Virus record (IMG/VR): IMGVR_UViG_3300037882_003354
Span: 62,001-126,000 of that record
DNA: 64,000 bases
Direction: 5' to 3' (one strand)
The notes below the pieces were generated by a model that was not told the origin of the DNA, did no database searches, and saw only the letters and a list, made by a program, of their open reading frames with translations. Shown piece by piece: positions 4,029-57,229 of this stretch; within the stretch, counting starts at the first letter, position 1, and each line of letters begins with the position of its first letter. A program made the translations under genes and the position numbers.

Positions 4029-4457
4029 TTAGTTTGTGCCTGGCAATGCCTTGACTATTGTGTTCTTACTGGCGATGTCTTTGAGATCAAATATGGCCTT
4101 GCTAATATTTATGGTTTCCGTGAGATTTTTAATGATTGGAACCCCATTTAAGTCGTCGATCAAACAGCCCACTGGATCCCCATGTTCATTTATGTACACA
4201 CCACTTCTATCTGGTCTAAGTATAAAAGTCCAGATGGCATGTTTGCCCTTGAATGCATTGCCAAAACCCTGTGATTTAACGTCTGCCACCTCCCTGATGG
4301 GCGGGTCATCGTAAGAAATTATACTGCGTATTTCTGCACACTGAGTCAGTGTGATGAAGTTCTTGTTTTGATCCAGCTGTCGTTGTGAGCCCTGAGTCAA
4401 TCGTATGATGCCAGTGTGTGTGATATCCACCAGCGTTCGAATTTCTATTGTGTCCAT
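4029..4457 (-). CDS. hypothetical late protein
   Basis: 142 aa ORF; perfect TATAAATA at 4476-4483. Confidence 0.75.
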   Translation of the reverse strand: MDTIEIRTLVDITHTGIIRLTQGSQRQLDQNKNFITLTQCAEIRSIISYDDPPIREVADVKSQGFGNAFKGKHAIWTFILRPDRSGVYINEHGDPVGCLIDDLNGVPIIKNLTETINISKAIFDLKDIASKNTIVKALPGTN

Positions 4458-4486
4458 AAAGTACCTACTTTATGATATTTATAGTC

Positions 4487-8478: not shown

Positions 8479-11400
8479 TCACCTTCGAACGAAATGATAG
8501 TCGCCGTCCGGCCCATTGTTACAAAATATGCCCATGCAATCAAACCCCTGTTGGTGCATGTATGCTATCACTGGCAGGGCCAGGGGCGCACCCTTGTTGT
8601 ATTCCACAACCTGCAGTTCCAGTATGACATGATTGACTGATTTCAATGTCTCTGTTGCACCACGCAGCACATCCAACTCAGCACCCTGTACATCCATTTT
8701 GATTAAATCTGGTGGCGGAAACCCTCTTTGAGATACTATGGAATCCAGAGTACATGCGGTGAGCATTCGACGTATACTTTCAGGATACAACTGATCGGCT
8801 GCCGGGCTGAGTTCTGAATTTTCCCTGTAGTAACTGTTACCACCTGGGTTTTCTGTATTCTCATAAAAGCCGATTTCCCTGCCGTCTTGATCACTCAGCA
8901 GACCAATGTTGTATGTCATTCCGGCTTCTTGGTACAAGAATTCGCTGGCTGACATGGCTTCAAATGCTATGTATTCTGCATCACCCCACACTCGTTTGGC
9001 GCAGTTGGTCCAGTGTAACACGCATGCACCTATGTCATATATGACCCGTGGTGCAACTTTTAGATTTTGCTGCATGTGCACCAGATAGTTATAGTGGTCA
9101 TTGGGCAGTAGAGACATAGTGCTCAACTCTCGAAGTCTCCGTTTGACTGGATCTTCTGCAACAGCGGCTGGGATGTTGTTGTCCACTTGAAATGTATGCG
9201 ATCCAATGTGTCGGCATTGAATACTGGTATCAGCCCAGATCCTGAATCCCTTGGCCAGTGCTTTGGCGCAGAAGTCTGTGTCCTCAGATATGGTGTGAGC
9301 ATGGTCGATGGCCGAGTGATATTTAAATTGTGGGTATTCGATGGCCCTGATGACATCTGTCTTGACCAGCACACAGCCAAATCCGCATCCGGCAATCTCC
9401 ACCAGGCCGCGACCTTTGATCTTTTCATATGGAATGTTGGTGACACCGCCGCGTCCATTGTGCTCATAGAGTTCCAGGGTGTGTTCACCAAACTTGCGTT
9501 GTATGTACAGTCCTGACACCATGTCACAGTCATGAGCCAGCATTTTCTTGAGCGTGTCTCGATCAAATGCTATGTCACTGTCTATGGAGAACAAATAGTC
9601 GTAATTCATGGACCAGTGTGCAATGAGATTGCGCACTTGATCAATGTTATATCCGTAGAAATATTGGAATTCCACTTGATATCCATCTGGCACTTCCATG
9701 TCGTAGATGGATTTAAATGTGTCCACCTCGATGTTCTTGGCAGTGGGTATGCCAATTAGAATACGTTTCTTGACCGCAGGTACGGGTACAACCATGGATT
9801 CCACCGGCCTAATCGAGAGTGCAGGCACAGTTGGTGTCACCACTGCACTGGTGGACTTTTCCAAAACTGTGAGTCCGTTGTTATGAACAGTATGATATTT
9901 AAAACGCCATTCTGGATGTTGGATCATGAACTCAATGATGGCCGGCAACAGTCCAGGGCTATCTATTGTGCCTGTTGCAAATGTAAAGGTGTCATGAAAT
10001 ACAATGTATTTGTTCACTTTATTGTGGTGTCTGGTCAGCTCAGCAGACAGTTGTTCATAAGAATGATCAGTGTCTATGAACAGCAAATCAGTGGGCTCAA
10101 TGAGTAGTGTTCGCGTGTCTGCCGCAGCATATGTACAGTCCTTGCCCAGCTGTCGAGCAACATCAAACAGTCGACCGACTGATTCAACTAGATATAGATC
10201 ATAAGATGTTAGTTTGCAATCACTCACCAACCAGGCCCTGGTTGACGAACCGTTTCTCACACCAAACTCAGTGACGGTCTTGCATTCGCCCGCCAGTTTT
10301 CTCAGTAGTGGCAAGTGTTGGTTGATGTCACTGGGCGATTGGCATTCCAATTGATATTCGTGTTCTAATATGTCCGTGTTGTTCATTTTAAGTTTTTCCT
10401 GTTCATATACAATTCTTTCTCGCTCTAAAAAGCCATCAGTGATGTCAGTATTGCCAGTGGTGGCGGCAAATGTGCCAGTGAATTTCATATTGGTTATGAA
10501 ATAATTTGTGCGTCCTTTTTTCAACTGTAAATCAAAGATAAAATTATCACCGTAATATATATTCAGCCCTGGGGGAATGTCCTGCCAGATGCTTCGGTGC
10601 AGAAACATCAGGCATCCAAACCCATAGGTATGCTGACCAGTCCAGGGCAGGATGTCAATGGCACCGTCAGTGATGGCTGGCTGATCAAAATCAGGTTCAC
10701 CGGGACACAGACCAAACACTCCGTTGGCTGGAGTCAGCAGATCTTCCAATCTGGAGAATACATCCAGATCGAAATACATGTCGTCGTTGACTATACAAAT
10801 CCTGTCATTACGAGCCACCTTGACACCCAGATTCCAGGCTGGGTTTACGTAGATGTTGAGCCCAAAGTCAAACATATGGATCTTGGCATGATCGGCCACA
10901 CCCACCGGTGTTCGGGTGGTGTCGTTGTTGATGATGATGACCTCATCAACAGCAGGGTGATCGCATAACCGGGCCAGGAAGGAGACAAACTCTGCAGGAC
11001 GGCGCCACATGGTGGGTACAATTACAGAATACTGTTTGACTGTGGATCGAGTGCTGATGATTCGAGCGTTGATGTTCTGCTCCTCTGCATTGACCTTGTA
11101 ATCGTTCAAGGGGTTGGCATCGTTGTAGTTGTACACCACATCCTGCAGACATTTGACCCGGTTGGGGTCAGCCGCCTCAATCAGTGCGTAGAACACAGCA
11201 CCGTCGCCACCGGCCTTGAACCATTGCCCTTGCGGATCCTGGAACAGGGCATCTGGCAGATCATTCACCAGATGCTTCTTGAAGGTTCTCAAGTGTGTGT
11301 AGGGCAAGATCCAGTTGAAGTGGTGATTTCTGTAATCACGATTTTGTTTGACTGCCTCGGGATACGGCTGACTGATCAAGGGTATGTTGTCCACCATGCT

Positions 11401-13101
11401 CCAGCAGGAGCCGTAGGTGAATTCAGTTGATCCGTCATAGATGGCATTGTAACGAGCGAATATTGAATTGTCGTTGACCAGTTTGTCATCACCATCCAAG
11501 AGCATGATGATGGCTTGATCATTTAATTTACGAATGGTGTCCATCTGATTTTTCACAGCACCCTGATTGACAGAGTTCCGGATCAGTGTAAACCGATCGC
11601 GTAGATCAGCTGGCAGGTCATCAATGGTCCTTGCAGCAACTTGATGTCCCTGGTCACTGGAACAGTCGTCAATCAAAATGTGCCGGTAGTTGGTGTAGTC
11701 CTGTGAGGCCACACTAAGGATGCAATCAGCGACATATGCTTGGCCATTGTAGAAGGGACTGACCACCACGATCTCTTGCTCGGTGTTGGCACGATGATCC
11801 TCAAATTCCACCTGATTGGTGAATCTGCGATTCCAGATTTTATGCACTCTGTGGTTGATCCTGCTGGCCCGACGATATTCCTCCACCGGCAGGTATGCGC
11901 CAGTCTTACGATAAATTATCTGCTTCCATTGCATGGCCACACTGTCCCAGCCGGCGATGTCTTTGACGATGTTACAGTAGTATTGTTTTTGTTGATGTAG
12001 GTATCGATCGTTGTAGGCTCTGACCACCATGTCCACAAACCGGTCCACTTGTTGCTGCTGATTGACGTTGGGATATAATCCGTTGGGTTCAATGGGGTAG
12101 TCTATATGATAGCAGGCACCATCCAGGGCTGTTTCTTCCATGGCACCAAACCTACAGGTGAGCACAGGTGTGTTATACAGCAGGCTTTCCAGGGTGGATA
12201 TGCCAAATGTTTCAGGGAACGCGGTGGGATAGATGGTAAAATTAGCCTGGGCTAGAATTTGCGCAATTTCTTTCTGTGGTATGACGCCAGTAAATTCCAG
12301 ACCACGGGCTGCATTGGTGGGATCGTTGGCCATGATCCTCCATCGTTTTTCCTGATCGTCAGGTTCACTGGCTGTGCTAAATCTGTAGTAGCCACCGATG
12401 ATTTTCAGTTGTGCTCGTGGTATGTGTTGCTTGACTCTGGGCCACACATGTTCAATCAGTGGAATCATGCCCTTGGTCACTGATGCATTGTATACGAACA
12501 GGTTGGGATCCTTGGCAGCAATGTCCACCTCGGGAATGTAATTTCTAACACCATTACGTGTACAGGTGATCCGGCGCTTGAGCACTTCAAACATGCGCTT
12601 GCCACCGTGATCGCAGGTGGCAACATAGGATGTATGCCAGTCACTTAATGTGAACACATCAGTGATTCGATCTGCCAGTGCCAAGGGTTCAATAAAGACA
12701 TCGCCCAGGCAGAATGTGTCATGCATCCAGAGTATACGCATCCGGGCTCGGCTCAGTATACGATCATACAGATTCATGTCCTTGAACTGCCAGGCTCTGT
12801 GATCTTGCAGTCGCTCAGTATTCTGTGGATCAATAAACGGAATCACAGTTCGTGAACTGATCACCACATCAAATTCATGATCCTGGTTAAGATCTTGCAA
12901 GGGACGATAGGTCACACCATCGTAGACACCAGGTCTAGCATGATCGATATCACAGTTGTTGAAAATGGTCACAGCAAAACCCAGCCGCTGCAACTCCAGG
13001 CCCATGAGTGTGACTGCACTCTCCGAACCACCCAGTCCCTGACGGAATACCGTGGTGCCGTCGTAGGGAATACCAATAATGTCAATAATAGCAAGTTTCA
13101 T
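8479..13101 (-). CDS. multidomain glycosyltransferase/methyltransferase polyprotein (GT-B + 3 GT-A + 2 SAM MTases)
   Basis: GLGGSES and ETFGISTLE (GT4-like); SPFYN..ILIDDCSSD..LDGDD and IVPT..VNDD (GT2-like); EFGVRNG..FIDTDH..FHDT (MTase); IGIPT..SIDSD..GFGCVL..SED (GT-A); YDIGA..IKMDVQGAE (FkbM-like). Confidence 0.85.
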   Translation of the reverse strand: MKLAIIDIIGIPYDGTTVFRQGLGGSESAVTLMGLELQRLGFAVTIFNNCDIDHARPGVYDGVTYRPLQDLNQDHEFDVVISSRTVIPFIDPQNTERLQDHRAWQFKDMNLYDRILSRARMRILWMHDTFCLGDVFIEPLALADRITDVFTLSDWHTSYVATCDHGGKRMFEVLKRRITCTRNGVRNYIPEVDIAAKDPNLFVYNASVTKGMIPLIEHVWPRVKQHIPRAQLKIIGGYYRFSTASEPDDQEKRWRIMANDPTNAARGLEFTGVIPQKEIAQILAQANFTIYPTAFPETFGISTLESLLYNTPVLTCRFGAMEETALDGACYHIDYPIEPNGLYPNVNQQQQVDRFVDMVVRAYNDRYLHQQKQYYCNIVKDIAGWDSVAMQWKQIIYRKTGAYLPVEEYRRASRINHRVHKIWNRRFTNQVEFEDHRANTEQEIVVVSPFYNGQAYVADCILSVASQDYTNYRHILIDDCSSDQGHQVAARTIDDLPADLRDRFTLIRNSVNQGAVKNQMDTIRKLNDQAIIMLLDGDDKLVNDNSIFARYNAIYDGSTEFTYGSCWSMVDNIPLISQPYPEAVKQNRDYRNHHFNWILPYTHLRTFKKHLVNDLPDALFQDPQGQWFKAGGDGAVFYALIEAADPNRVKCLQDVVYNYNDANPLNDYKVNAEEQNINARIISTRSTVKQYSVIVPTMWRRPAEFVSFLARLCDHPAVDEVIIINNDTTRTPVGVADHAKIHMFDFGLNIYVNPAWNLGVKVARNDRICIVNDDMYFDLDVFSRLEDLLTPANGVFGLCPGEPDFDQPAITDGAIDILPWTGQHTYGFGCLMFLHRSIWQDIPPGLNIYYGDNFIFDLQLKKGRTNYFITNMKFTGTFAATTGNTDITDGFLERERIVYEQEKLKMNNTDILEHEYQLECQSPSDINQHLPLLRKLAGECKTVTEFGVRNGSSTRAWLVSDCKLTSYDLYLVESVGRLFDVARQLGKDCTYAAADTRTLLIEPTDLLFIDTDHSYEQLSAELTRHHNKVNKYIVFHDTFTFATGTIDSPGLLPAIIEFMIQHPEWRFKYHTVHNNGLTVLEKSTSAVVTPTVPALSIRPVESMVVPVPAVKKRILIGIPTAKNIEVDTFKSIYDMEVPDGYQVEFQYFYGYNIDQVRNLIAHWSMNYDYLFSIDSDIAFDRDTLKKMLAHDCDMVSGLYIQRKFGEHTLELYEHNGRGGVTNIPYEKIKGRGLVEIAGCGFGCVLVKTDVIRAIEYPQFKYHSAIDHAHTISEDTDFCAKALAKGFRIWADTSIQCRHIGSHTFQVDNNIPAAVAEDPVKRRLRELSTMSLLPNDHYNYLVHMQQNLKVAPRVIYDIGACVLHWTNCAKRVWGDAEYIAFEAMSASEFLYQEAGMTYNIGLLSDQDGREIGFYENTENPGGNSYYRENSELSPAADQLYPESIRRMLTACTLDSIVSQRGFPPPDLIKMDVQGAELDVLRGATETLKSVNHVILELQVVEYNKGAPLALPVIAYMHQQGFDCMGIFCNNGPDGDYHFVRR

Positions 13102-20141: not shown

Positions 20142-21611
20142 TCATGCGAGTCCAAATCGTGCCTTGGTTGCGTTGTAGTTTTGCAAGATTTCAGCATTGT
20201 TCAATGCGGTGTTGTATATTCTGACAAGTCCGATGATACCATTGCGTTTATTTGTACTGTCATCTGTCATAAGAAACAGATCCGTGGCGGTGGCGCTATT
20301 GGGATAAGGATATGTTTGCGAAACACTTCTTATGGCTGTAGCAGAATTGATGGTCCGAATCATGTGGCCGTCAGCACCTCCAACTTTTCTAAGAGTAATT
20401 TGATACCAAGTGCCTGCGACAAGGTTTGGAGTGTTGACGGGTGTGTTAGACTGGGCAGACAGGTATTTAGACGAAGCCGCTATTCTATTATAGCTCGTCG
20501 TACCAGTTCCAATGTTACGTAATGCCCATGGTGTATTACTTGGATCCACATAACTGCTAATAATGGGAATTACTAGACTAGCAGTGGTTGTTGGTTTATA
20601 CCAAATTTCCACAGTCATGTTATCTGTATTGACCAATGAACTGAGACTGGCACCATATTGCGATGATGCTGCAACAAATGTCAACTGTCCCCCTGAAGTG
20701 CTGGAATCATATGCGGGAGTATTGTACAACGTCATGTCGGCTGTGCCCACCTGATCTCGCCAAACACCGCTACTATCGTATCCAACACCACTATATTTTG
20801 TGGGCGATACACCAGATGGGGCAGTATCAAAATAATTAGTAAGACCAGTGGTAGCGGCCGTGGTGGGTTGCGTATAAACAAATCTGGCTTGGACTGCATT
20901 ATAATTTTGCAGCACTTCGGCGTCCGTAATAATTCTATCATATGCTCTGATTATTGCAATGCTACCGTCCCCGGCCGATATGGTAGTTGCTCCAGTGGCG
21001 GGCACTACTGGGGAAACATCTGCGCTGGTGGCCACCAGAGCTCCGTTGACATAGAGTTTGACATATGATCCCAGACCAAAAGTCATGACCACCTGATTCC
21101 ATGCTCTGGGAACAAGATATTGATAAACATTATTAATAGTGGCACTAACGGGTGGATCCATGTTGTCACTCACAACAATCTGATTGTTTAACTCCCAACT
21201 TGGTACAAACCCGACGTTCACATTACAATTGATAATTATACCATCAGTTGACGGCACATAAAAATGCCAGGTTTCTATAGATAATTCAGTTAGAGGATCT
21301 TCACTTCCCGAAGTTGTTCCAAACGTGCCATTGAATGTTGCACTGATAAGAGGGGTAAATTCAAAACTACCACCACCAAATGTTGGCAAATATCGTATTC
21401 TAGCATTTGTTGTGATGTCCTCAACATATTCAGAATCTGGTGTGGGCAACCAATTACCAGTACCTGAATATGTTGCTGCATCAAAATCGTTGGTGCGACC
21501 CAAGGTGACCACCTCAGGTGGTGGCTCCGCCACTTGAACCCTGGGCACACGACTGGCCAGTGGGCTTTGGTGGGTGGCACCAGAGTTAATGCTGCCTATG
21601 CGATTCCACAT
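20142..21611 (-). CDS. virion protein with two LamG/concanavalin-A-like domains
   Basis: S/T(I/V)ExW..., W.Q(V/I)..T, G.I.IxR.Y...L...E(V/I)LQNYNA twice. Confidence 0.8.
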   Translation of the reverse strand: MWNRIGSINSGATHQSPLASRVPRVQVAEPPPEVVTLGRTNDFDAATYSGTGNWLPTPDSEYVEDITTNARIRYLPTFGGGSFEFTPLISATFNGTFGTTSGSEDPLTELSIETWHFYVPSTDGIIINCNVNVGFVPSWELNNQIVVSDNMDPPVSATINNVYQYLVPRAWNQVVMTFGLGSYVKLYVNGALVATSADVSPVVPATGATTISAGDGSIAIIRAYDRIITDAEVLQNYNAVQARFVYTQPTTAATTGLTNYFDTAPSGVSPTKYSGVGYDSSGVWRDQVGTADMTLYNTPAYDSSTSGGQLTFVAASSQYGASLSSLVNTDNMTVEIWYKPTTTASLVIPIISSYVDPSNTPWALRNIGTGTTSYNRIAASSKYLSAQSNTPVNTPNLVAGTWYQITLRKVGGADGHMIRTINSATAIRSVSQTYPYPNSATATDLFLMTDDSTNKRNGIIGLVRIYNTALNNAEILQNYNATKARFGLA

Positions 21612-21668: not shown

Positions 21669-22289
21669 TTAGAATCCGTTGGTGTTTGAGTTGTAAAATA
21701 CCAGACCAGTCACGTTGGTGGTTTTGGCAATGGTGGGCGTTTGATAGTTGAATTCTAAGAAATCTTCTCCATCGAGTTCACCAAACTGAATCCTTACGGG
21801 ATAATACTGGCCAGCAGTCAGTGCAATACTGCCGCTGACTTCGTTAGCGCCGTGTGCGCCGCCGTTGTTGATTAGTGCATTGCCTGCGTCAAATCCTGTG
21901 ACAGCATTGGGACCAATCCACATGTAACTGGCATCATCGCTGTTGAGGAAGAATGTGTGAGTCTGAGTGGTGGTGGGTTTGAAGTAGCCCAACCATTGCA
22001 CACTGAAATTGCCGCCGTCAGAATAGTCAGTATCACCATCATTAGGTCCATTATTTTGTTCGAAAATATCTGTGGTTTGCACAGATGTGGCTGGGTTTGA
22101 ACCGAATCCCTGTGGGGTGGCACCGGCAAAAAAATTCACATTATCGTCGAAATATCCTGCATAAGTGGTTTTGAACAATCCTGCGACATAGACGGCAGTG
22201 GCTGCGACGGCTGGCAGGCGTGGTCGTCGACTGGCCAGGGGGCTTTGGTTCACTGCACCAGCACTTGTCCTGCCTATGCGATTCCACAT
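21669..22289 (-). CDS. virion protein with PA14 domain
   Basis: Start moved to MWNRIG at 22289; FSVQWLGYFKP..T.TFFLNSDDASYMWIG...GQYYPVRIQFGE is the PA14 pattern. Confidence 0.8.
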   Translation of the reverse strand: MWNRIGRTSAGAVNQSPLASRRPRLPAVAATAVYVAGLFKTTYAGYFDDNVNFFAGATPQGFGSNPATSVQTTDIFEQNNGPNDGDTDYSDGGNFSVQWLGYFKPTTTQTHTFFLNSDDASYMWIGPNAVTGFDAGNALINNGGAHGANEVSGSIALTAGQYYPVRIQFGELDGEDFLEFNYQTPTIAKTTNVTGLVFYNSNTNGF

Positions 22290-22290
22290 G

Positions 22291-22593
22291 TTAGGAGTTG
22301 GGCAGTTCCATGACACTCATCAGACCCGAGGTGCTGGCTGTGCGGCCGGCCACCTGTTCCAGTCCCTCCACCGCGTAATATTCTGTGGTGCCTGCTGTCA
22401 ACAACACAGAAGCGGTGGTGGCGGTGCTCACGGCTCCGGGACTGCCAATGTTCAGGTAGGTGTCTTGTGTGACTGCCACACGTATGATGCCGGTCTGGCT
22501 GTTGAGTGCCAGTGTGGCTGTGCTGGTGGCACTGGTCACTGAGAGATTTTGAACTGTGCCAATCCTGGGGGCACCTTTTCTTAAATATGTCAT
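22291..22593 (-). CDS. small beta-rich virion protein
   Basis: 100 aa, late promoter CTAAATA 22615-22621, AAGGA SD. Confidence 0.65.
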   Translation of the reverse strand: MTYLRKGAPRIGTVQNLSVTSATSTATLALNSQTGIIRVAVTQDTYLNIGSPGAVSTATTASVLLTAGTTEYYAVEGLEQVAGRTASTSGLMSVMELPNS

Positions 22594-22627: not shown

Positions 22628-22885
22628 TCATGCAGGTGATTCCGTGGTTTTTGGGAGTAAAATTTCTTCCACCAACTGCACCACTCCACGCACATTGTAA
22701 ATTTTACTGGCCCGGTGTTCTGGCAACTGTATGTTGAAGTGATCTTCCACCACCAGAACCAGTTCCATGTAGTCCAGACTGTCCAAGCCTAGATTTCGTT
22801 TGAAATGGCTGTCCATGGTGACTGAATCTTCGCGCATGCGCAATTCCCTGGCTATAACTTGTATGATCTGCTGTTCAATGTTCAT
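22628..22885 (-). CDS. acpP: acyl carrier protein
   Basis: 85 aa with LGLDSLDYMELV (phosphopantetheine Ser) and FNIQLPE motif. Confidence 0.9.
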   Translation of the reverse strand: MNIEQQIIQVIARELRMREDSVTMDSHFKRNLGLDSLDYMELVLVVEDHFNIQLPEHRASKIYNVRGVVQLVEEILLPKTTESPA

Positions 22886-23668
22886 TTATGTCTTGATGTA
22901 ATTTAATAGTATGCTGTGATCACGGTGATCAGGGTGCCAGTCTGGGCGCATGAATTCCAGCACGGCACAGGTGACTGTCCAGAACACACCACATTGACGG
23001 TCAAACAACACGGCAACTGCATCCTTGAGTGTGCGCCATTTCCACAACTGGCCATCTGATCGCAGGAATATCACGGTGTTTTTCATCACATGGTACATGT
23101 AACACACGTAAACCAACAACATGACCCATCTTCTGTGATTGACACCGCCATCCACCAGTTGCCATACGTTCATGGCCACTGACTTGTGCTCGATTTCTTC
23201 CACGGCGTGCCAGCGCCAGATGGTTTCAAAATGTGGATGCATGCGGCGCAGAGCAGTTCTGTATCTCAGCAGGTATTCTGCATTGACTGCTGTCATGTGC
23301 TCAATGCACACAGTGGCGGTCAAACACACGCGATCGCTCCAACGTGTGCGTAGATGGGACCAAAATTTGTGCTGTCGCTGGGCCGCAGCCTGTGCCGGTA
23401 ATCCCTGCTGCTCCAGCCATTGTGTGTACTGTGCATGCACATGACCGTGCCAATTTTCCTGTTTGACAAAGGTATTGAAATCCACCAACTGCGCAGGATC
23501 TGTCACAGCGTGCCGATAGGCCTTGAGTGAATCTATGAAGAATCGTTCCCCGTCAGGAAAGTTTATATTCAGGGAATTCAACCAGTGTGTTTTGAATGGG
23601 CTGCCATCATTCCAATAATATGGAAGTTCTTGATCCCAATCTAATTTCAGTGGCTGTGACGTAAACAT
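22886..23668 (-). CDS. ferritin-like di-iron protein ('predicted metal-dependent hydrolase' family)
   Basis: FPDGERFFIDS, QENWHGHVH, IEHMTA, WHAVEEIEHKSVA: E / ExxH / E / ExxH ligand pattern. Confidence 0.8.
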   Translation of the reverse strand: MFTSQPLKLDWDQELPYYWNDGSPFKTHWLNSLNINFPDGERFFIDSLKAYRHAVTDPAQLVDFNTFVKQENWHGHVHAQYTQWLEQQGLPAQAAAQRQHKFWSHLRTRWSDRVCLTATVCIEHMTAVNAEYLLRYRTALRRMHPHFETIWRWHAVEEIEHKSVAMNVWQLVDGGVNHRRWVMLLVYVCYMYHVMKNTVIFLRSDGQLWKWRTLKDAVAVLFDRQCGVFWTVTCAVLEFMRPDWHPDHRDHSILLNYIKT

Positions 23669-23678
23669 CAGATATTTA

Positions 23679-24446
23679 TCATGGATTATTCACTGATGTG
23701 ATGATCCAGAAATCTGAACTCATGCTGGTATTCTGCACCACTTGGTAGGGCATGTAGAAGTAACCGCGGTCACCCCAGCCGGTGCCCCAGGAATTTCTTG
23801 CTATGAATTGCTGAGTGCTGTCTCGATAACCCACCAGGGCCACCGCATGTCCCCCCAGCAACCGTTCTGTTTGAACATTGGGGTAGGGCATTTGTCCTGT
23901 ACGTGCCACCGCCAGGGTTTGAAAACTTGAATACACATTGAATCCCATGACCACAGGGTATCCCTGCGCCAGGGCTGTCTTGACTCCATCAAAGTCGGTT
24001 ATGCGACGATAGGCACCCACTCGTCGTTTGAGAGCGTCTTTGTATGCTGCCGCGCTGGGCTTGATGGCGAACCTGCCAATGATATAAGGCCACAGGCTTT
24101 CCAAGGGTGCACCAAATTTGTTCACAGCCTTGATGCCGTCTCGCAGGTAGGCGCCACTGTCATAGTTCACTGTGCCGTACAGCAACCGCTCCTGGTAATA
24201 GATGAACAGTCGGCTGACGTCCAGATTCTTCTTGGCTTTACGATTGAGGTATTCAACTAGTCCAGCAATGGCCTGGCCAGTGCATGATCCCAACTGCCCT
24301 TGGTTTTCTATGGGGCTGCATCCCGGTCTTAAATCCACCAGCGCAGGTAATGCCAATTGCGGTGCAGCATACAAGTAATCCCTGGCATCTGGTGGATCTG
24401 GACGCCAGTGTAATCGGGGTATGGTTATATTAGTTGGACGTGGCAT
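23679..24446 (-). CDS. papain-like (C1A) cysteine protease
   Basis: QGQLGSCTG, GGHAVALVGY, RNSWG catalytic motifs; start moved to 24446 (AGGA SD). Confidence 0.9.
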   Translation of the reverse strand: MPRPTNITIPRLHWRPDPPDARDYLYAAPQLALPALVDLRPGCSPIENQGQLGSCTGQAIAGLVEYLNRKAKKNLDVSRLFIYYQERLLYGTVNYDSGAYLRDGIKAVNKFGAPLESLWPYIIGRFAIKPSAAAYKDALKRRVGAYRRITDFDGVKTALAQGYPVVMGFNVYSSFQTLAVARTGQMPYPNVQTERLLGGHAVALVGYRDSTQQFIARNSWGTGWGDRGYFYMPYQVVQNTSMSSDFWIITSVNNP

Positions 24447-24505
24447 GTGTTTTTTCCTGGGTTGACTGTGCAAAAATCATTATAAGATTGTGAATAAGAT
24501 TTACG

Positions 24506-27500
24506 TCATTGTATGCTTACCAAATCAACATCCAACCTTTCTAACTTGTTGTGCACATAATCACTAATATATTCAGCGGTATACTGTGCAGGTTGTTCTT
24601 GTAGACGTAATCCTGAGATGTATTTGGGATCAATGTTGGCAAATTCTTCTAAAGATCTCAACGCTCTGTTGTCCTTGACAAACTTCATATCCCGAATAGG
24701 ATAGATGTTGTTAAATCTATTGCTGGTCAATATGCCTTGAGCAAACAGATTCAAGTGATACTGGGTCCATACGTTGTAAAACTTTACAGGTTCTTCAATA
24801 GTTTCTTTGGAAATCAGTGTGACTTCTTCACCCTGTTCATTAAATGTAATAGTTCCCACTGGCGTGGTATCTCTAACCAACATGGTAAACGCACCTGCTT
24901 GTTTATTAAACACATGGTGTCCCACTGTGCGTAACACAGTTCCATCACTGAATGTAAATCGATAGTGTTTGTCATGTGTTTCTTCCTGTTTAACAAACAC
25001 TGGCAATGCTTCGCTAAACTCACCCAAGTCAAAGTTCCATACACGAAGTAAATCATTGTACCTAACGTCCTCAATGGCTTTATATGAACCGTCAGCCATG
25101 GTGACCATGGTACCTTCGACCAGGCAAACCACACTCCATGCTCCTGTGTAGATATTACTAGTACATCCATTGAGTCCCGAGTCAATGGTTATTTGGGTAG
25201 TCAAATCACTCCCACTGCCATATAACCCAAGATCGGGCGATGTATATGTATTAGCACCAGGATTGACTGTCAGGGTGTGAGGGCCGCTAAATTCTCCGCC
25301 GCTGAACCATTCAAAGAAAATAGTACCTGTCGTGGATGTTGAAACAGTGGACGTAAAATCAACAGTTGCTGCCCTACTTTCAAAACCCACTGACACGTTG
25401 GTTATTGTCATAGTTGCCGGCACAATCACTGGCACATCAACACTTGTGGTCACACCGTTATTGGTGGTAACACGAGCAGTGGCGTCAACAGTTGGCGCAA
25501 CTGATCCCAAGAACAGTCGAGTATTTGCATCAACAGTATATGTTGTTGTGGGTATAAATGGTGCCAGATACTTGGCCGTGTTGCTGATTCTAACTAAAGA
25601 CATCTTACCGCTTAAGGTGCCACCGTTTGCTGGACCCAGTCGACCTATACGCAATGGGTCTACAGAGTTGGTATAACTGGCTGTGCCAAATGTACCACTA
25701 ACCTTGGTCTGTTCAATACCATTGTACCAGACCGTTTGTGTGCTTGCGTTGTTGACTATGGCCACATGCGTCCATACACCTGGAGTAGGTTCGGTGTATC
25801 GGACATCTTCGTTAGCGCCACTACCTGATAAGAATACCAGTTTGTTATCGCTCAATGCCACAACCACGGCGTTGGTGGTACTCCAGCCCACTTGGTTTAA
25901 TAATCCCCAGATGCCGCCACCCGCTGTATCTGATGCGGCATTGGCTTTGAGCCAGAACTCTATGGTCCAAGTTGTGCCCAGATTAAACGGAGCATTTGCA
26001 GGGTCATACAGGCTGTAGTTTTCGTCCATGTATAAATTGTCTGCCAACTTTGGAGCCCAGGTCAGGTCCCAGGTTGTGCCACCATCTGAGACGCCTGTGA
26101 GCGTTACTTGATAGGGTACACCAGTCCCCTGTTGGCCAACGAGTATCCAGCCCACTTGTGGTTCTGGATAACTGCCTTTGAGGATATCACCACCTGATAT
26201 AGTGCCGCTCCACGCATGACTGGTGGCGGTGCCCAGCGCGGTGTAACTTGGCTGTGCCACTGATAGGTAATCGTTTTCACTATTTACAAACTGTAGACTT
26301 TGATAACTTGGAAAGTCATTGCTGATCACTGCTCCATTATTGGTAATAGAATGTCTAGCACCACTGAAGTTGTATGGACCAGGAGTGGGCACATTAGTAA
26401 CTGGTACTCCCCAATTGTCAGGATCTGCTGAGACTACTGCTCCAGTGACAGTTGCGGTAGTTGATGTGTTTAATGAACTTACTATATCTCCTGCCTTTAT
26501 TTGATTATTTAAATTGGGATATGTTGACTTAGAGAAATACATGGTATCTAAATTATTAGTAAATATCGATACTTCATTCAACTCATAATTAGATAGATCG
26601 GTCAGCGGACTATCACTGCCCAACATCAGTCGAGTGTCTGCGCCAGCACCATAGGACAACGATGGGCTAAAGTTTGCCAGATACGTGGCTGTGTTGCTGA
26701 CTCGGATCATGGCCAGTTTACCAAGGAAGCCTTGCCCGTTCACTCCTAGTCTACGGCCAATGTTTACATCCGATGATCCATCACTTAATGCGCCTGGGCT
26801 TACTATGGTTCCCTGATGTACTCCATTATAGTATACCTTGGTGTCACCACCCCCATTGGCCACATAGGCCACATGGTTCCATATTCCCGGTGTGGGTTCA
26901 GGAATTCCGCTCTGTTGGACATTTCTGAACAGCGTGCTTCCATACATAAATCCTAAATCTATCTTGCCAGCGTCCGGACCTTGTGACATCACAGTTCGTA
27001 TGTTGCTGGTGCTGGCATTGGTTTGTTTGCTCCAGAACTCAACGGTGTATGTTGTGCCCAGGTTCCAATCAGCTTGTGTGTTGGATACCAATAGATATGG
27101 ATTTCCTGCTGGGAAGTCTAGACTAAATGGGGCCACTAGTGATAGACTGGTGTCGTTGATGGTGACTGAAGTGCTGGTGCTTAATATTGTGCCGCTGGTG
27201 CTAGCCGAACGCAGGGCAACCGTGAATGTCTCACTGCCTTCAGTGGTAGTATCAGCAGTGGGTGTTACTGAGAATGAACCGCTATTGCTGGTAATGCTGA
27301 ATGATCCAAATGTTGTACCAAAATCACCCGTGTTGGTTTGAACAGTCCAATAATACGTTCCGTTGACAATGTTTGTACCTGTGACATTAAATGTTATTGC
27401 TGAACCTTCGTTAGTGCTGGTTGTTGCTGGTGTTAAAGTATACAGGGGTGGTGGGGGAGGGGGAGGTGTATAACCACCACTGGACGCAATGGCTCCCGCT

Positions 27501-27520
27501 AATGTTTGAACAATGCTCAT
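24506..27520 (-). CDS. adhesin: Calx-beta-like + 2 LamG domains + C-terminal Hint domain
   Basis: NEG..ITF..TEG.ETFTV (Calx-like); TVEFW/TIEFW..WxHVA (LamG); CLVEGT..TVGH..FYNV..ILTSN (Hint). Confidence 0.8.
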   Translation of the reverse strand: MSIVQTLAGAIASSGGYTPPPPPPPLYTLTPATTSTNEGSAITFNVTGTNIVNGTYYWTVQTNTGDFGTTFGSFSITSNSGSFSVTPTADTTTEGSETFTVALRSASTSGTILSTSTSVTINDTSLSLVAPFSLDFPAGNPYLLVSNTQADWNLGTTYTVEFWSKQTNASTSNIRTVMSQGPDAGKIDLGFMYGSTLFRNVQQSGIPEPTPGIWNHVAYVANGGGDTKVYYNGVHQGTIVSPGALSDGSSDVNIGRRLGVNGQGFLGKLAMIRVSNTATYLANFSPSLSYGAGADTRLMLGSDSPLTDLSNYELNEVSIFTNNLDTMYFSKSTYPNLNNQIKAGDIVSSLNTSTTATVTGAVVSADPDNWGVPVTNVPTPGPYNFSGARHSITNNGAVISNDFPSYQSLQFVNSENDYLSVAQPSYTALGTATSHAWSGTISGGDILKGSYPEPQVGWILVGQQGTGVPYQVTLTGVSDGGTTWDLTWAPKLADNLYMDENYSLYDPANAPFNLGTTWTIEFWLKANAASDTAGGGIWGLLNQVGWSTTNAVVVALSDNKLVFLSGSGANEDVRYTEPTPGVWTHVAIVNNASTQTVWYNGIEQTKVSGTFGTASYTNSVDPLRIGRLGPANGGTLSGKMSLVRISNTAKYLAPFIPTTTYTVDANTRLFLGSVAPTVDATARVTTNNGVTTSVDVPVIVPATMTITNVSVGFESRAATVDFTSTVSTSTTGTIFFEWFSGGEFSGPHTLTVNPGANTYTSPDLGLYGSGSDLTTQITIDSGLNGCTSNIYTGAWSVVCLVEGTMVTMADGSYKAIEDVRYNDLLRVWNFDLGEFSEALPVFVKQEETHDKHYRFTFSDGTVLRTVGHHVFNKQAGAFTMLVRDTTPVGTITFNEQGEEVTLISKETIEEPVKFYNVWTQYHLNLFAQGILTSNRFNNIYPIRDMKFVKDNRALRSLEEFANIDPKYISGLRLQEQPAQYTAEYISDYVHNKLERLDVDLVSIQ
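24719..25126 (-). other. Hint (hedgehog/intein-like) autoprocessing domain
   Basis: Cys1 codon at 25124-25126, block B TVGH, block F/G FYNVWTQYHLNLFAQGILTSN ending at 24719; followed by Arg and a 70-aa tail. Confidence 0.8.
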
Positions 27521-37574: not shown

Positions 37575-39017
37575 TTAAAAACTCTCTGAAATTAAGGGTG
37601 CAGTGGCTGCGTAGGGGCGGTACAGTGGGTCACCATGAGCTGAAATGACTCCACCATTGGTGGCTGCTAGCGATGTTAGTCCAGTGTTGGTGGCGTTAAA
37701 TGTGCCCTTGTACACTGCTTCGGCACCGCACATGCCGCGTAATAAATTTACCAGTATGACATCAGCATCGGCCAGATTTTGCGCACCTGGCTCGCCTGCT
37801 ACGCCTATGCCCAATGAGCCGCCGTTGCGCAGGCAAAACTCAGCTGGCCAACCGGCTCCTGATCCCCAACTGTAGATCCAGCCGCCGGGTTCAAAACCCA
37901 GACGGTCTTGATACTCTGTGGTGGCCCTGATGGAGTTGCCGTCACCAGTAAACATGCCCGGTATAAAAGTATACAGCCTAGGACAACTGGCCGCAAACAC
38001 TGTGACTTTTTCACCATCTAGACCTTGGATGGAGAAATCTCCCTGAGTTCCCACATATGGTTTGACTGAAGGTGTACCATGCCAGGCTGATTTTGCAGCC
38101 CATCGATTGTCTTCATCAGTACCAATGCCTGCCAATACATTACGACTATTGGGATCAGCGGGATTACTCAAAGTACCATCGTCCAGCACGTAATAGGTGT
38201 TCAATCCAAAATCTCGGGCTGCTAGGTTGGCAGCAACTGACAACCAAACTCCGCCTCCCCAGATGTATGCCGAACCACCTATAACATGCGGTTTTGTTTT
38301 ATTATTTTCCTTCTCGACCTGAATGGCATTATTCACAATAGTCTGCACTTCTGACAGACTGGAGAACAAGATGCCCAACCTGGTGCTTTGAGCCCAGCCC
38401 ACTCTGCCCCAGGCTGGCAGATCAGCTGACAGGGCCTTGTTGGTCAACGGTGCTGGAGCCGCACGTCTGGTGGCGCCTGAAGTGTTCCCGGTAGTGGTCA
38501 ATCCTCCAATGATATTAGTCAGTCTTCTGGTATAGGTGCCGCCAATGGCGCTATAGTTATTGGCAAATATGCGAGCAGAAGATGCAAACATGAGTTCAGA
38601 CCAATATGTGGAAAAATAAGGCACAATTACATTCGTAATTATGCTGGTGACCCCGGGCAGTGAGAACACTGCCTCAATTTTATTTTCTAAAATTATTTCT
38701 TTTAGTGCTTGAATTAACTCCAGCCCCACCTTGCCACTGGATATTTTTGGTGAAACTGCCGTGCACAGAGTGGGCGACGTCTGACTGTTGACCACTTGAT
38801 GACTGCTGGTGGTCAGTGACATGAGAGCCACTGCCTCTTTGGTGGTCAAACTTTTGGTACAATCACCAAAGTCAAAACTAACCCAGTAGTAATCTGTGGG
38901 GTCCAAGTCAGTCAAACCTCGCGCAGTGGCATACCAGTCGGAGGTCTGCTGAGACAGTTCAGCAAAGGCTGCATTGCTGTTTCTGATCAACAACACTTTT
39001 TTATGATTAATAGCCAT
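37575..39017 (-). CDS. TIGR03790-like protein
   Basis: Start moved to 39017. N-terminal VLLIRNSN...S...WYA.ARGL and C-terminal G..GEP...LLRG...AEA.Y...HGDPLYRPY resemble that family from memory; not search-verified. Confidence 0.5.
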   Translation of the reverse strand: MAINHKKVLLIRNSNAAFAELSQQTSDWYATARGLTDLDPTDYYWVSFDFGDCTKSLTTKEAVALMSLTTSSHQVVNSQTSPTLCTAVSPKISSGKVGLELIQALKEIILENKIEAVFSLPGVTSIITNVIVPYFSTYWSELMFASSARIFANNYSAIGGTYTRRLTNIIGGLTTTGNTSGATRRAAPAPLTNKALSADLPAWGRVGWAQSTRLGILFSSLSEVQTIVNNAIQVEKENNKTKPHVIGGSAYIWGGGVWLSVAANLAARDFGLNTYYVLDDGTLSNPADPNSRNVLAGIGTDEDNRWAAKSAWHGTPSVKPYVGTQGDFSIQGLDGEKVTVFAASCPRLYTFIPGMFTGDGNSIRATTEYQDRLGFEPGGWIYSWGSGAGWPAEFCLRNGGSLGIGVAGEPGAQNLADADVILVNLLRGMCGAEAVYKGTFNATNTGLTSLAATNGGVISAHGDPLYRPYAATAPLISESF

Positions 39018-40767: not shown

Positions 40768-40800
40768 TGTTTATATCCAGTTATTTTCATATTTATTGTG

Positions 40801-55564: not shown

Positions 55565-55593
55565 GCGGTCACTCCAGGTTTATATGTATATAT

Positions 55594-55995
55594 TTATCGG
55601 TCCAGCCGGCGCTCACTCACAGCATACACTGGATCAGGTGTCAGGAACTGGGGCTTGCGCATGATGGTCTTGGTGACCAGACGCCGGGAATCACCTGAAT
55701 CCTGAACGACAAAGGGCAGATTGATCTGAGTCAAGAGATCACGCATGACAGCCTCACTGCCCGAACCCAGATGAGCGATGGCTCGGCCATGTCGCTGATA
55801 CTCTTGTTTGAACAAGCGTATGAGTTCGGAGACAGTGATGTCACGACCATTGCGTGGATCATTCAGTCGGTCCAGGAAGTGTCGGGTGAATGACACATCT
55901 ATGCCCAGTCGACCCCACAGGCCGTCGGCAAAAGTCTCCACTTGATCCAGTTGTTGCTGGTCCAGGGTTTCACAGATGAGTTCGCGTAGTAGCAT
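55594..55995 (-). CDS. hypothetical late protein with MLLRELICE leader
   Basis: 133 aa; FTRHFLDRLNDPRN core; GATAAATA 6 nt before ATG. Confidence 0.75.
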   Translation of the reverse strand: MLLRELICETLDQQQLDQVETFADGLWGRLGIDVSFTRHFLDRLNDPRNGRDITVSELIRLFKQEYQRHGRAIAHLGSGSEAVMRDLLTQINLPFVVQDSGDSRRLVTKTIMRKPQFLTPDPVYAVSERRLDR

Positions 55996-56028
55996 GTGAA
56001 ATATTTATCCTGGTGGTACCGCCGGTGA

Positions 56029-57145: not shown

Positions 57146-57229
57146 GCCCGGGTGGTGAAATGGTAGACACAAGGGACTTAAAATCCCTCGGCGCAAGCTG
57201 TACCGGTTCGAGTCCGGTCCCGGGCACCA
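57146..57229 (+). tRNA. trnL-UAA: tRNA-Leu (anticodon UAA)
   Basis: GCCCGGG/CCCGGGC acceptor stem, TGGTAGAC D-loop, AGGGA-CTTAAAA-TCCCT anticodon arm, long variable arm, GTTCGAGTC, encoded CCA. Confidence 0.97.

What the first reader, a model, noticed from the sequence alone, without database searches (positions are those of the whole stretch)
22628..23680. Phage ACP coupled to a ferritin-like di-iron enzyme inside the virion module
Seen: the di-iron gene stop (22886) abuts the ACP start (22885) behind a GATAAATA late promoter; the enzyme has E / ExxH / E / ExxH ligands and the ACP keeps the DSL serine. Known: this ligand pattern defines ferritin-like di-iron carboxylate oxidases, including soluble acyl-ACP desaturases and AurF-type N-oxygenases, which act on carrier-bound substrates. 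Inference: a two-gene late system that oxidises an ACP-tethered acyl chain, either to remodel host membrane before lysis or to make a lipid for attachment to virion proteins.
Basis: partly seen in the sequence, partly recalled or inferred. Interest (0 to 1): 0.7.

Follow-up and report, generated by a model that had tools for sequence, protein, structure and literature searches.

The report
Phage di-iron oxidase with its own ACP
A widespread freshwater jumbo phage carries a small, conserved gene cassette with its own promoter: an uncharacterised ferritin-like di-iron enzyme (Pfam PF10118, wrongly named a "hydrolase") followed directly by an acyl carrier protein, so it probably oxidises a carrier-bound fatty acyl chain, though the chemistry and purpose are untested.

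Summary
Window 22886-23668(-) encodes a 260-aa PF10118 protein (E 1.6e-65). Its TAA stop is followed at once by the ATG of an 85-aa AcpP-like carrier protein at 22628-22885(-), which passes the TIGR00517 cut-off and keeps Ser36 in DSL.

The enzyme is a ferritin-like di-iron protein:
- The AF2 model has pLDDT 91. Its best structural matches are RNR-R2, CmlI, MMOH, AurF and R2lox (Z 12-13).
- The invariant residues are E41, Q70-E71-x-x-H74, E123 and H154-x-x-E157-E158-x-x-H161. This is an AurF-type 3-His/4-carboxylate set.
- It also recalls the QExxH/HxxDExxH motifs of CylC-type halogenases, which act on acyl-ACP.

The enzyme-to-ACP order (gap -3 to +14 nt) recurs in 14 distinct phage loci at 45-78% identity. 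These form one part of a phage-only clade. None of 80 bacterial homologue loci has an adjacent ACP.

NATAAATA, 4-5 nt before the ATG, is conserved upstream. In five relatives it sits right after an intrinsic terminator.

The cassette lies elsewhere in other phages, so a virion-lipid role is unsupported. Substrate, chemistry and ACP docking are untested; the complex prediction gave no verdict. It is a new variant of a known kind and of moderate interest.

The parts
23673..23680 (-). GATAAATA element (NATAAATA class), 4 nt upstream of the enzyme's ATG and overlapping the TGA stop of the upstream peptidase gene. Putative T4-late-like promoter that would give a nearly leaderless mRNA.
   Evidence: The same NATAAATA-N4-5-ATG arrangement occurs in 12 related loci, in five of them directly after a hairpin plus T-run. 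Promoter activity and timing are inferred, not shown.
22886..23668 (-). 260-aa ferritin-like di-iron (dimetal-carboxylate) oxidase-type protein, Pfam PF10118 'Metal_hydrol'
   Evidence: Pfam E 1.6e-65. AF2 pLDDT 91.4. VIA Z 13.2 R2, 12.8 CmlI, 12.2 MMOH and AurF, 11.9 R2lox. Foldseek top hits R2lox/R2.
23546..23548 (-). Glu41 codon (PxGERFF motif), predicted first carboxylate ligand
   Evidence: Invariant in 45 sequences. Aligns with the first Glu of the AurF-family profile.
23447..23461 (-). Q70-E71-x-x-H74 (QExxH), predicted ligands on helix 2
   Evidence: Invariant. Aligns with ExxH of the AurF family. QExxH is the form reported for CylC-type halogenases (PMC12101540).
23297..23302 (-). E123-H124, predicted third-helix carboxylate ligand
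   Evidence: Invariant. In register with the AurF-family Glu.
23186..23209 (-). H154-x-x-E157-E158-x-x-H161 (WHxxEExEH), an HxxxExxH motif on helix 4
   Evidence: Invariant. Aligns with H-x-x-x-E-x-x-H of the AurF family. This spacing gives the third His of the 3-His/4-carboxylate site of AurF (PMC12101540).
22628..22885 (-). 85-aa AcpP-like acyl carrier protein. Its start codon directly follows the enzyme's stop.
   Evidence: PF00550 E 7e-11. TIGR00517 72.7 bits against a cut-off of 70.45. phrog_5934. It is the only PP-binding gene in the 322.5-kb genome.
22778..22780 (-). Ser36 codon, the predicted 4'-phosphopantetheine attachment site (G-L-D-S-L-D)
   Evidence: Invariant in 14 distinct phage ACPs.

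Best explanation
This is a self-contained two-gene cassette carried by a lineage of freshwater (mostly jumbo) phages. It consists of a NATAAATA promoter-like element, a ferritin-like di-iron oxidase or oxygenase of the uncharacterised PF10118 family, and a translationally coupled AcpP-like carrier protein.

Proposed mechanism:
1. The phage ACP is phosphopantetheinylated by the host AcpS and acylated by the host type II fatty-acid synthase. The phage encodes no PPTase, acyl-ACP synthetase, ketosynthase or acyltransferase.
2. The basic di-iron enzyme (pI 8.3) docks the acidic acyl-ACP (pI 5.0).
3. Using O2 and host-supplied electrons (the phage has no 2Fe-2S ferredoxin gene), the enzyme oxidises the tethered chain. 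The reaction could be desaturation, hydroxylation or, as in CylC, halogenation.
4. This diverts a private pool of modified acyl chains late in infection.

Shown here: the fold, the invariant ligand set, the AcpP character of the carrier, the conserved coupling, the phage specificity, and the cassette's own upstream element.

Inferred: metal content, ACP as the substrate carrier, the type of oxidation, late timing, and the physiological purpose.
For: - Fold and ligands.
- Remote homology to the AurF family: 28 of 45 family members hit PF11583 weakly. P0033 residues 75-197 match AurF profile positions 111-229 at E 1.7e-6. hhalign of A1 against 22 AurF-family proteins aligns 148 columns with all four ligand motifs in register, E 0.012.
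- ACP type. Ser36 is invariant.
- Pair conservation: the enzyme gene is followed by the ACP gene with a gap of -3 to +14 nt in L002-L006, L008, L009, L012-L017, L019, L023, L025, L026, L030 and L038. This holds despite different neighbours.
- Single origin: on a quick ML tree the 14 ACP-coupled rows need only one change, inside a phage-only clade of 28 rows (SH-aLRT 99).
- Phage specificity: 0 of 80 bacterial loci have an adjacent ACP.
- Own regulatory element: NATAAATA-N4-5-ATG is conserved and follows terminators in L005, L006, L008, L012 and L019.
- Precedent: CylC and NocO are AurF-like di-iron enzymes with QExxH and HxxDExxH motifs that act on acyl-ACP, and their genes associate with PP-binding genes (PMC12101540, PMC8406957). 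Stearoyl-ACP desaturase is a second such ferritin-like enzyme.
- Dependence on the host: PF01648, PF00111, PF00501, PF00109 and PF01553 are absent from the phage genome.
- Charge complementarity.
- A near-identical 257-nt contig over 22890-23146 occurs in a lake metatranscriptome. This is weak, because carry-over of DNA is not excluded.
Against: - Fourteen of the 28 rows in the phage clade lack the ACP, including a 95%-complete 331-kb genome with no PP-binding gene at all. The enzyme therefore does not need a phage ACP.
- Bacterial homologues are stand-alone genes beside AraC or TetR regulators, short-chain dehydrogenases, an FMO and alpha/beta-hydrolases. Nothing there points to ACP-bound substrates.
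- Complex prediction gave no support (score 0.00, no verdict).
- No member of PF10118 has a known activity, and I found no literature on it.
- Ligand geometry in the model could not be inspected, because no coordinates were available to me.
- The chemistry is unconstrained. The AurF-like ligand set is typical of N-oxygenases rather than of C-H oxidising enzymes.
Confidence: 0.5

Rival explanations
1. The two genes travel together but work separately. The di-iron enzyme oxidises a free lipid, hydrocarbon-like or aromatic substrate, or the host's own acyl-ACP, as its bacterial and ACP-less phage relatives must. The phage ACP independently modulates or hijacks the host fatty-acid synthase, like the orphan ACPs of other phages.
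For: - ACP-less members exist in the same phage clade, including a near-complete genome with no ACP.
- Cultured phages (Motura, Vibrio eugene/helene, Erythrobacter ZS04) carry orphan ACPs with no enzyme partner.
- A phage ACP has been predicted to bind host FabZ (bioRxiv 10.64898/2026.03.01.708874).
- No docking support was obtained (no verdict).
Against: - The stop/start abutment or 4-nt overlap, and the invariable order directly downstream, persist across 14 distinct loci at 45-78% identity in changing contexts.
- The locus-trained ACP profile found an ACP nowhere else in the fetched phage flanks.
- The label needs only one change on the tree.
Confidence: 0.27
2. The pair does act on an ACP-tethered substrate, but the chemistry is N-oxygenation (as in AurF/CmlI) or halogenation (as in CylC) that builds a specialised metabolite, not fatty-acid desaturation or hydroxylation for membranes.
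For: - The 3-His/4-carboxylate HxxxExxH motif and the profile similarity point to AurF rather than to desaturases.
- QExxH with an invariant Gln is reported as typical of CylC-type halogenases (PMC12101540).
Against: - The phage has no FAAL or AMP-binding enzyme, and no PKS or NRPS partner.
- The ACP is AcpP-like at equivalog level.
- The motif reads HxxEExxH rather than HxxDExxH, and the third-helix Glu123 is invariant.
Confidence: 0.13
3. The protein is what its Pfam name says, a metal-dependent hydrolase. It might be an acyl-ACP thioesterase or an ACP phosphodiesterase that strips the ACP or its cargo.
For: - The family name, and source annotations such as 'predicted metal-dependent hydrolase'.
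- One bacterial member is fused to an alpha/beta-hydrolase domain.
Against: - All structural neighbours are redox-active ferritin-like dimetal proteins.
- The ligand set is the canonical di-iron one.
- The name is an automatic prediction with no experimental support that I could find.
Confidence: 0.05

Closest known systems
PF10118 / COG3687 'predicted metal-dependent hydrolase' (uncharacterised bacterial family)
   Same: The protein is a full-length member (221.7 bits against a cut-off of 33.2). It shares all invariant residues with the family. Predicted structures superpose at TM 0.83-0.90.
   Different: The phage proteins form their own clade at no more than 37% identity to bacterial ones. 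Only phage members are followed by an ACP gene. Bacterial genes typically sit beside a divergent AraC regulator.
AurF / CmlI arylamine N-oxygenases (PF11583, ferritin-like di-iron oxygenases)
   Same: Four-helix-bundle di-iron fold (Z 12.2-12.8). E ... ExxH ... E ... HxxxExxH ligand spacing, in register by profile alignment. Many family members give weak HMM hits.
   Different: The window protein does not reach the PF11583 threshold. AurF has Asp before ExxH, whereas this family has an invariant Gln (PMC12101540). AurF acts on free p-aminobenzoate and has no carrier protein.
CylC / NocO dimetal-carboxylate halogenases of cyanobacteria
   Same: They are AurF-like ferritin-fold di-iron enzymes with QExxH and HxxDExxH motifs. 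They act on fatty acyl-ACP, and their genes associate with PP-binding genes (PMC12101540, PMC8406957). Here QExxH and HxxEExxH are invariant, and an ACP gene is adjacent.
   Different: - In NocO the two motifs are about 150 residues apart by the published numbering, against 84 here.
- Glu replaces Asp in the second motif.
- CylC is thought to lack the third-helix Glu ligand, whereas Glu123 is invariant here.
- CylC loci carry a FAAL, which this phage lacks.
- Direct sequence homology was not tested.
Soluble stearoyl-ACP delta-9 desaturase (PF03405)
   Same: It is a ferritin-like di-iron enzyme that oxidises an acyl chain carried on an AcpP-type ACP. The structural match is Z 9.2-9.8.
   Different: It has a 2-His/4-carboxylate site. 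It is a lower structural match than R2, AurF or CmlI. Profile alignment found nothing (E 0.73, with a two-sequence profile). It uses ferredoxin, which the phage does not encode.
Orphan phage acyl carrier proteins (phrog_5934; for example Achromobacter phage Motura, Vibrio phages eugene and helene, Erythrobacter phages)
   Same: They are AcpP-like small acidic proteins encoded by phages, 33-43% identical to this one.
   Different: They lie among small early or replication genes with no recognisable enzyme partner. None of those phages has a PF10118 gene.

Membership tests
Pfam PF10118 (Metal_hydrol) | HMM score above the gathering threshold over the full length | tested here: met
   221.7 bits against 33.2; residues 7-250 match profile positions 5-247 of 247.
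Ferritin-like di-iron oxidases/oxygenases (FDO superfamily) | Four-helix-bundle ferritin-like fold | tested here: met
   AF2 pLDDT 91.4. Every top hit in three libraries is an FDO: R2, R2lox, CmlI, AurF, MMOH, ADO, COQ7. Z up to 13.2, which is near the noise ceiling quoted for helical models, but the hit list is homogeneous.
Ferritin-like di-iron oxidases/oxygenases (FDO superfamily) | E ... ExxH ... E ... ExxH ligands on four helices | tested here: met
   E41, E71xxH74, E123 and E158xxH161 are invariant in 45 sequences and fall on the predicted helices 40-49, 58-87, 112-135 and 145-172. The 3-D geometry was not inspected.
Ferritin-like di-iron oxidases/oxygenases (FDO superfamily) | Binds two Fe (or Mn/Fe) and activates O2 | not testable with these tools
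   Needs metal analysis and spectroscopy.
AurF/CmlI N-oxygenases (PF11583) | HMM score above the gathering threshold (29.6 bits) | tested here: not met
   The window protein has no PF11583 hit at E up to 5. The best relative reaches 27.8 bits.
AurF/CmlI N-oxygenases (PF11583) | Third His ligand (HxxxExxH) giving a 3-His/4-carboxylate site | tested here: met
   H154-xxx-E158-xx-H161 is invariant and aligns with the same motif in 22 AurF-family proteins. The definition of the motif is taken from PMC12101540.
CylC-type dimetal halogenases | QExxH and HxxDExxH motifs | tested here: inconclusive
   QExxH is present and invariant. The second motif is HxxEExxH, with E in place of D. The motif definition is from PMC12101540.
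CylC-type dimetal halogenases | Sequence homology to CylC/NocO, and a genomic partner FAAL plus ACP | tested here: inconclusive
   An ACP is adjacent. No AMP-binding gene or FAAL occurs in the genome. No CylC sequence was available, so homology was not tested.
Soluble acyl-ACP desaturases (PF03405) | Sequence or profile similarity to PF03405 | tested here: not met
   No Pfam hit. hhalign gives E 0.73 over 24 columns outside the ligand motifs, with only two desaturase sequences in the profile. Structural Z is 9.2-9.8.
Type II FAS acyl carrier protein (TIGR00517 AcpP equivalog) | Score above the equivalog cut-off and a conserved DSL serine | tested here: met
   72.7 bits against 70.45. Ser36 lies in G-L-D-S-L-D.
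Type II FAS acyl carrier protein (TIGR00517 AcpP equivalog) | Is phosphopantetheinylated and carries acyl chains | not testable with these tools
   The phage has no PPTase, so modification by the host AcpS is inferred.
T4-type late promoter (TATAAATA) | Consensus octamer upstream of late or structural genes | tested here: inconclusive
   NATAAATA is enriched upstream of starts (38 of 59). It is conserved before this cassette and follows terminators in relatives. It ends only 4-5 nt from the ATG. The first base varies, no gp55-type factor was sought, and timing is unknown.

The most novel reading that the evidence does not exclude
A lineage of abundant lake jumbo phages has recruited an AurF/CylC-like di-iron enzyme and given it a private acyl carrier protein. 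Late in infection the pair makes a modified (desaturated, hydroxylated or halogenated) fatty acyl product. That would be a new kind of phage lipid-modifying auxiliary system. It would also be the first functional handle on PF10118, a family of about 4,700 sequence clusters whose 'hydrolase' name is probably wrong.
Probability: 0.4. Interest if true: 0.72.

Novelty: new variant of a known kind. Interest (0 to 1): 0.55.

Why it matters
PF10118 is a sizeable family: 4,702 clusters at 50% identity with E up to 1e-3. It is common in hydrocarbon- and lipid-degrading Proteobacteria. I found no known activity for it, and its name is probably misleading.

The phage cassette supplies what the bacterial genes lack, namely a candidate substrate carrier right next to the enzyme. 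That makes the biochemistry directly testable: co-express the two proteins and read the ACP cargo by mass spectrometry.

The known examples of ferritin-like di-iron enzymes working on acyl-ACP are the plant-type desaturases and the cyanobacterial CylC halogenases, both of biotechnological interest. A phage-borne third example, found in many lake metagenomes, would extend phage auxiliary metabolism from membrane-bound lipid desaturases to a soluble, carrier-dependent system.

Tried and rejected
- Complex prediction of enzyme plus ACP scored 0.00 and gave no verdict. It counts neither for nor against binding.
- Sequence searches of the PDB with the profile A1 and with P0033 found nothing at E up to 10.
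- Megablast of the region against GenBank phages found nothing. tblastn hits of the enzyme there fall mostly in records that look bacterial or prophage-derived; several are unannotated or are large multi-contig entries filed under a phage name.
- Literature searches for PF10118, COG3687 and the InterPro/PIRSF names found nothing on function.
- The word-indexed search with the ACP returned only 8 close relatives, so it gave no host clue. The capsid-like protein has no match among cultured phages. The host remains unknown.
- The 134-aa ORF that follows the ACP in many relatives was considered as a third component and rejected. Its homologue in this phage lies 18 kb away at 4029-4457(-).
- The upstream C1 peptidase was considered as part of the module and rejected. 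It is conserved only in the closest relative.
- The comparison with acyl-ACP desaturases is weak, because only two PF03405 proteins turned up in the 251 genomes sampled. My first extraction of one of them was in the wrong frame and was redone.
- The careful ML tree did not finish in the time allowed, so only the quick tree with SH-aLRT support is reported.
- Metatranscriptome evidence is a single 257-nt contig. That is too little to show co-transcription.
- Language-model neighbours in the ESM Atlas (ferritin-like, FA_desaturase_2, AurF, ADO; scores 0.77-0.84) are below the level at which they count as more than leads.
Full report
**Setting.** The window is bases 62001-126000 of a 322,512-bp IMG/VR virus record with direct terminal repeats, rated complete. 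It has 47.9% G+C and about 364 crude ORFs. Near-identical sequence occurs in at least 19 freshwater or lake metagenome runs from many studies. No cultured phage resembles it at the DNA level or in its capsid-like protein. The host is unknown.

**Observation.**
The junction reads AAG ACA TAA ATG AAC, so stop and start abut.
- The 260-aa protein is a full-length member of Pfam PF10118 'predicted metal-dependent hydrolase' (E 1.6e-65). It has no PHROG and no NCBIfam.
- The 85-aa protein is a PP-binding protein that passes NCBI's AcpP equivalog model TIGR00517 (72.7 against 70.45 bits). It matches phrog_5934 'acyl carrier protein' and keeps Ser36 in G-L-D-S-L-D.
- GATAAATA lies at 23673-23680(-). 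It overlaps the stop codon of the upstream gene and ends 4 nt before the ATG.

**What the enzyme is.**
- In an alignment of 45 homologues (A1), the invariant residues are E41, F44, F67, Q70, E71, H74, H78, L116, T119, E123, H124, W153, H154, E157, E158, E160, H161, K162, V164 and P246. It also contains a further His four residues before the last Glu (H154-xxx-E158-xx-H161).
- An AlphaFold2 model built on A1 is confident (mean pLDDT 91.4, pTM 0.89) and all-helical. The ligand residues lie on the helices at 40-49, 58-87, 112-135 and 145-172.
- Foldseek against the PDB finds only ferritin-like dimetal proteins at the top, namely R2lox and RNR R2, with weak E-values of about 0.05.
- An exhaustive VIA-align search gives RNR R2 Z 13.2, CmlI 12.8, MMOH 12.2, AurF 12.2, R2lox 11.9, aldehyde-deformylating oxygenase 10.9, COQ7 10.2, DesA2 9.8 and stearoyl-ACP desaturase 9.2. 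These Z values are near the ceiling that helical models can reach by chance. The hit list is homogeneous, however, and Swiss-Prot models agree.
- No solved structure is detectable by sequence.
- At the sequence level, 28 of the 45 family members give sub-threshold hits to PF11583 (AurF), with a best E of 3.4e-5, and 3 hit COQ7.
- In P0033 the AurF match covers residues 75-197 against profile positions 111-229. That spans the helices carrying ExxH, E and HxxxExxH.
- I fetched 22 AurF-family proteins from Gammaproteobacteria and aligned their profile to A1 with hhalign. The result was 148 columns at E 0.012, with all four ligand motifs in register.
- The same test against two acyl-ACP desaturases gave nothing (E 0.73). 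A two-sequence profile is a weak test.
- The protein is therefore a ferritin-like di-iron oxidase or oxygenase whose nearest named relatives are the AurF/CmlI family. The 'hydrolase' name has no support that I could find.

**A relevant precedent.** PMC12101540 describes the CylC/NocO halogenases as AurF-like ferritin-fold di-iron enzymes with conserved QExxH and HxxDExxH motifs, the Gln replacing AurF's Asp135. They chlorinate a fatty acyl chain tethered to an ACP. [quoted passage not shown] PF10118 has an invariant Q70-E71-x-x-H74 and H154-x-x-E157-E158-x-x-H161. This is a resemblance of motifs, not a demonstrated relationship:
- By the published numbering, the two motifs in NocO are much further apart than here.
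- The second motif has Glu where CylC has Asp.
- Glu123 is invariant here, whereas CylC is thought to leave that site open for halide.
- I had no CylC sequence to compare.

**Is the pair real?** Yes.
- Homologues at 97% down to about 45% identity come from other phage contigs, some of them 216-345 kb long.
- In L002-L004, L005, L006, L008 and L009 the called gene after the enzyme is a 78-82-aa PP-binding protein.
- I built an ACP profile from these and searched all ORFs of 64 loci. An ACP gene was found in 22 loci, always directly downstream on the same strand with a gap of -3 to +14 nt, and nowhere else in the flanks.
- The 14 non-identical ACPs are 30-88% identical to one another, keep the Ser and keep helix II. 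They are therefore under purifying selection.
- A quick ML tree of 64 enzyme sequences places 28 phage rows in one clade (SH-aLRT 99). Within it, the ACP-coupled rows fall into two starred sub-clades and need only one gain or loss.
- Among 80 bacterial loci with 5-kb flanks, none has an adjacent ACP. A single ACP-like ORF lies 2.6 kb away on the other strand in one of them.
- The coupling is therefore a phage innovation.
- The coupling is not obligatory. L010, L018, L020-L022, L024 and L028 lack the ACP, and a 95%-complete 331-kb relative has no PP-binding gene anywhere.

**The cassette and its control.**
- The context of the pair varies. In this phage and its 78% relative it follows a papain-like C1 peptidase and lies among fibre-like genes with Mtd_N, Laminin_G_3, PA14/GLEYA and collagen repeats.
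- In the other relatives it lies among small unknown ORFs and is followed by a conserved 134-aa gene. The homologue of that gene in this phage is 18 kb away at 4029-4457(-).
- What travels with the pair is the upstream element. NATAAATA followed by 4-5 nt and then ATG is present in the window and in L002, L005, L006, L008, L010, L012, L013, L014, L018, L019, L025 and L038.
- In L005, L006, L008, L012 and L019 the element follows directly after a GC-rich hairpin and T-run. Transcription ending at such a terminator would have to restart at the element.
- Genome-wide, 38 of 59 NATAAATA sites lie within 60 nt upstream of a same-strand start. They fall into two spacing classes, 1-8 nt and 16-32 nt. 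Several precede structural-type genes in the window, for example 976-2790 and 39007-40767.
- No sigma-70-like promoter or intrinsic terminator was found on the minus strand around the pair.
With only 4-5 nt to the ATG, the transcript would be nearly leaderless. Neither activity nor timing has been shown.

**What the phage does not supply.** The genome has no PPTase (PF01648), 2Fe-2S ferredoxin (PF00111), AMP-binding enzyme (PF00501), ketosynthase (PF00109) or glycerolipid acyltransferase (PF01553), and no second carrier protein. Activation and loading of the ACP, and electrons for the enzyme, must come from the host. This fits the ACP's close likeness to housekeeping AcpP. The enzyme is basic (pI 8.3) and the ACP acidic (pI 5.0). 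That fits the usual electrostatic docking of ACPs, but it is not specific.

**Bacterial relatives.**
- The family has 4,702 clusters at E up to 1e-3 in a 1.8-billion-protein library.
- The best bacterial matches (no more than 37% identity) are in Pseudomonas, Alcanivorax, Marinobacter, Spongiibacter, Oleispira, Moraxellaceae, Hahella, Parvibaculaceae and Polyangiaceae.
- The commonest neighbour is a divergent AraC-type regulator (29 of 80 loci), followed by a roughly 270-aa downstream gene (16 of 80 loci) that I take to be a short-chain dehydrogenase because SDRs occupy that position in the annotated loci.
- One locus lies beside an FMO/Baeyer-Villiger-type monooxygenase, an esterase and short-chain dehydrogenases. 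One protein is fused to an alpha/beta-hydrolase domain.
- This hints at lipid or hydrocarbon-type substrates but gives no activity.

**Mechanism proposed.** My best reading (confidence about 0.5) is as follows. The host AcpS and FAS charge the phage ACP. The di-iron enzyme then oxidises the tethered acyl chain with O2 and host reductant. The product is a phage-private pool of modified acyl chains made together with late genes.

The main rival (0.27) is that the two genes are merely co-inherited, with the enzyme working on a free substrate or on host acyl-ACP. The ACP-less relatives support this, and the invariant tight coupling argues against it. A second variant (0.13) keeps the ACP as carrier but makes the chemistry N-oxygenation or halogenation. 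A true hydrolase is unlikely (0.05).

The cassette's mobility between contexts gives no support to a virion link.

**Novelty and score.** Ferritin-like di-iron enzymes acting on acyl-ACP are known, and phage ACPs are known but orphan. I did not find a conserved phage cassette joining an uncharacterised AurF-like di-iron family to a dedicated ACP described anywhere. I rate it a new variant of a known kind, with interest 0.55.

Noticed in passing
window 23679-24473 (-): A papain-family C1 cysteine peptidase (PF00112 E 4.8e-15; phrog_16701) ends 10 nt before the di-iron gene. The same order, peptidase then enzyme then ACP, is kept in the 78%-identical relative (L002-L004) but not in more distant ones. 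A C1 peptidase inside a fibre-gene block is unusual.
   Followed up: partly
whole genome (G000); window examples 2818-2825, 4476-4483, 40790-40797, 55591-55598, 56002-56009 (all -): NATAAATA sites lie upstream of same-strand starts in two spacing classes, 1-8 nt and 16-32 nt (38 of 59 sites within 60 nt). The short class implies leaderless or nearly leaderless transcripts if the element is a promoter.
   Followed up: partly
window 8479-13101 (-): A 1,540-aa multi-domain protein combines GT1 and GT2 glycosyltransferase domains with an FkbM-type and a second methyltransferase domain. It lies next to the fibre-like genes and could glycosylate virion or host surface components.
   Followed up: no
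window 20142-21611 (-) and 21669-22316 (-): Two adjacent fibre-like proteins (Laminin_G_3; PA14/GLEYA) share an N-terminal 'MWNRIG...SPLASR.PR' segment. This suggests interchangeable receptor-binding modules on a common anchor.
   Followed up: no
window 24506-27520 (-), about the last 250 residues: The C-terminal part of the 1,004-aa Laminin_G_3 protein begins with 'C-L-V-E-G-T-M-V', which looks like a Hint/intein-type N-terminus. Pfam gave no Hint hit at E up to 1e-3, so this is unconfirmed.
   Followed up: no
window 4029-4457 (-); L005 7027-7431, L006 6027-6431, L008 6013-6417, L018 3773-4177: A conserved 134-142-aa ORF of unknown function directly follows the ACP in many relatives. In this phage it lies 18 kb away, itself preceded by TATAAATA.
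   Followed up: partly
L065-L067, L068-L147 (bacterial loci); P0266: Bacterial PF10118 genes are usually single genes beside a divergent AraC (Arabinose_bd + HTH_18) regulator. Short-chain dehydrogenases are common neighbours, and one locus has an FMO-type monooxygenase plus esterase. One protein is a fusion with an alpha/beta-hydrolase.
   Followed up: partly
window 22890-23146: A 257-nt contig from a lake metatranscriptome run matches the di-iron gene with 2 differences. This may be evidence of expression in nature, but carry-over of DNA cannot be excluded.
   Followed up: partly
window 45094-46407 (-) and 57146-57229 (+): An ATP-dependent DNA ligase (phrog_114, E 4e-91) and a tRNA-Leu(TAA) are encoded in the window.
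   Followed up: no
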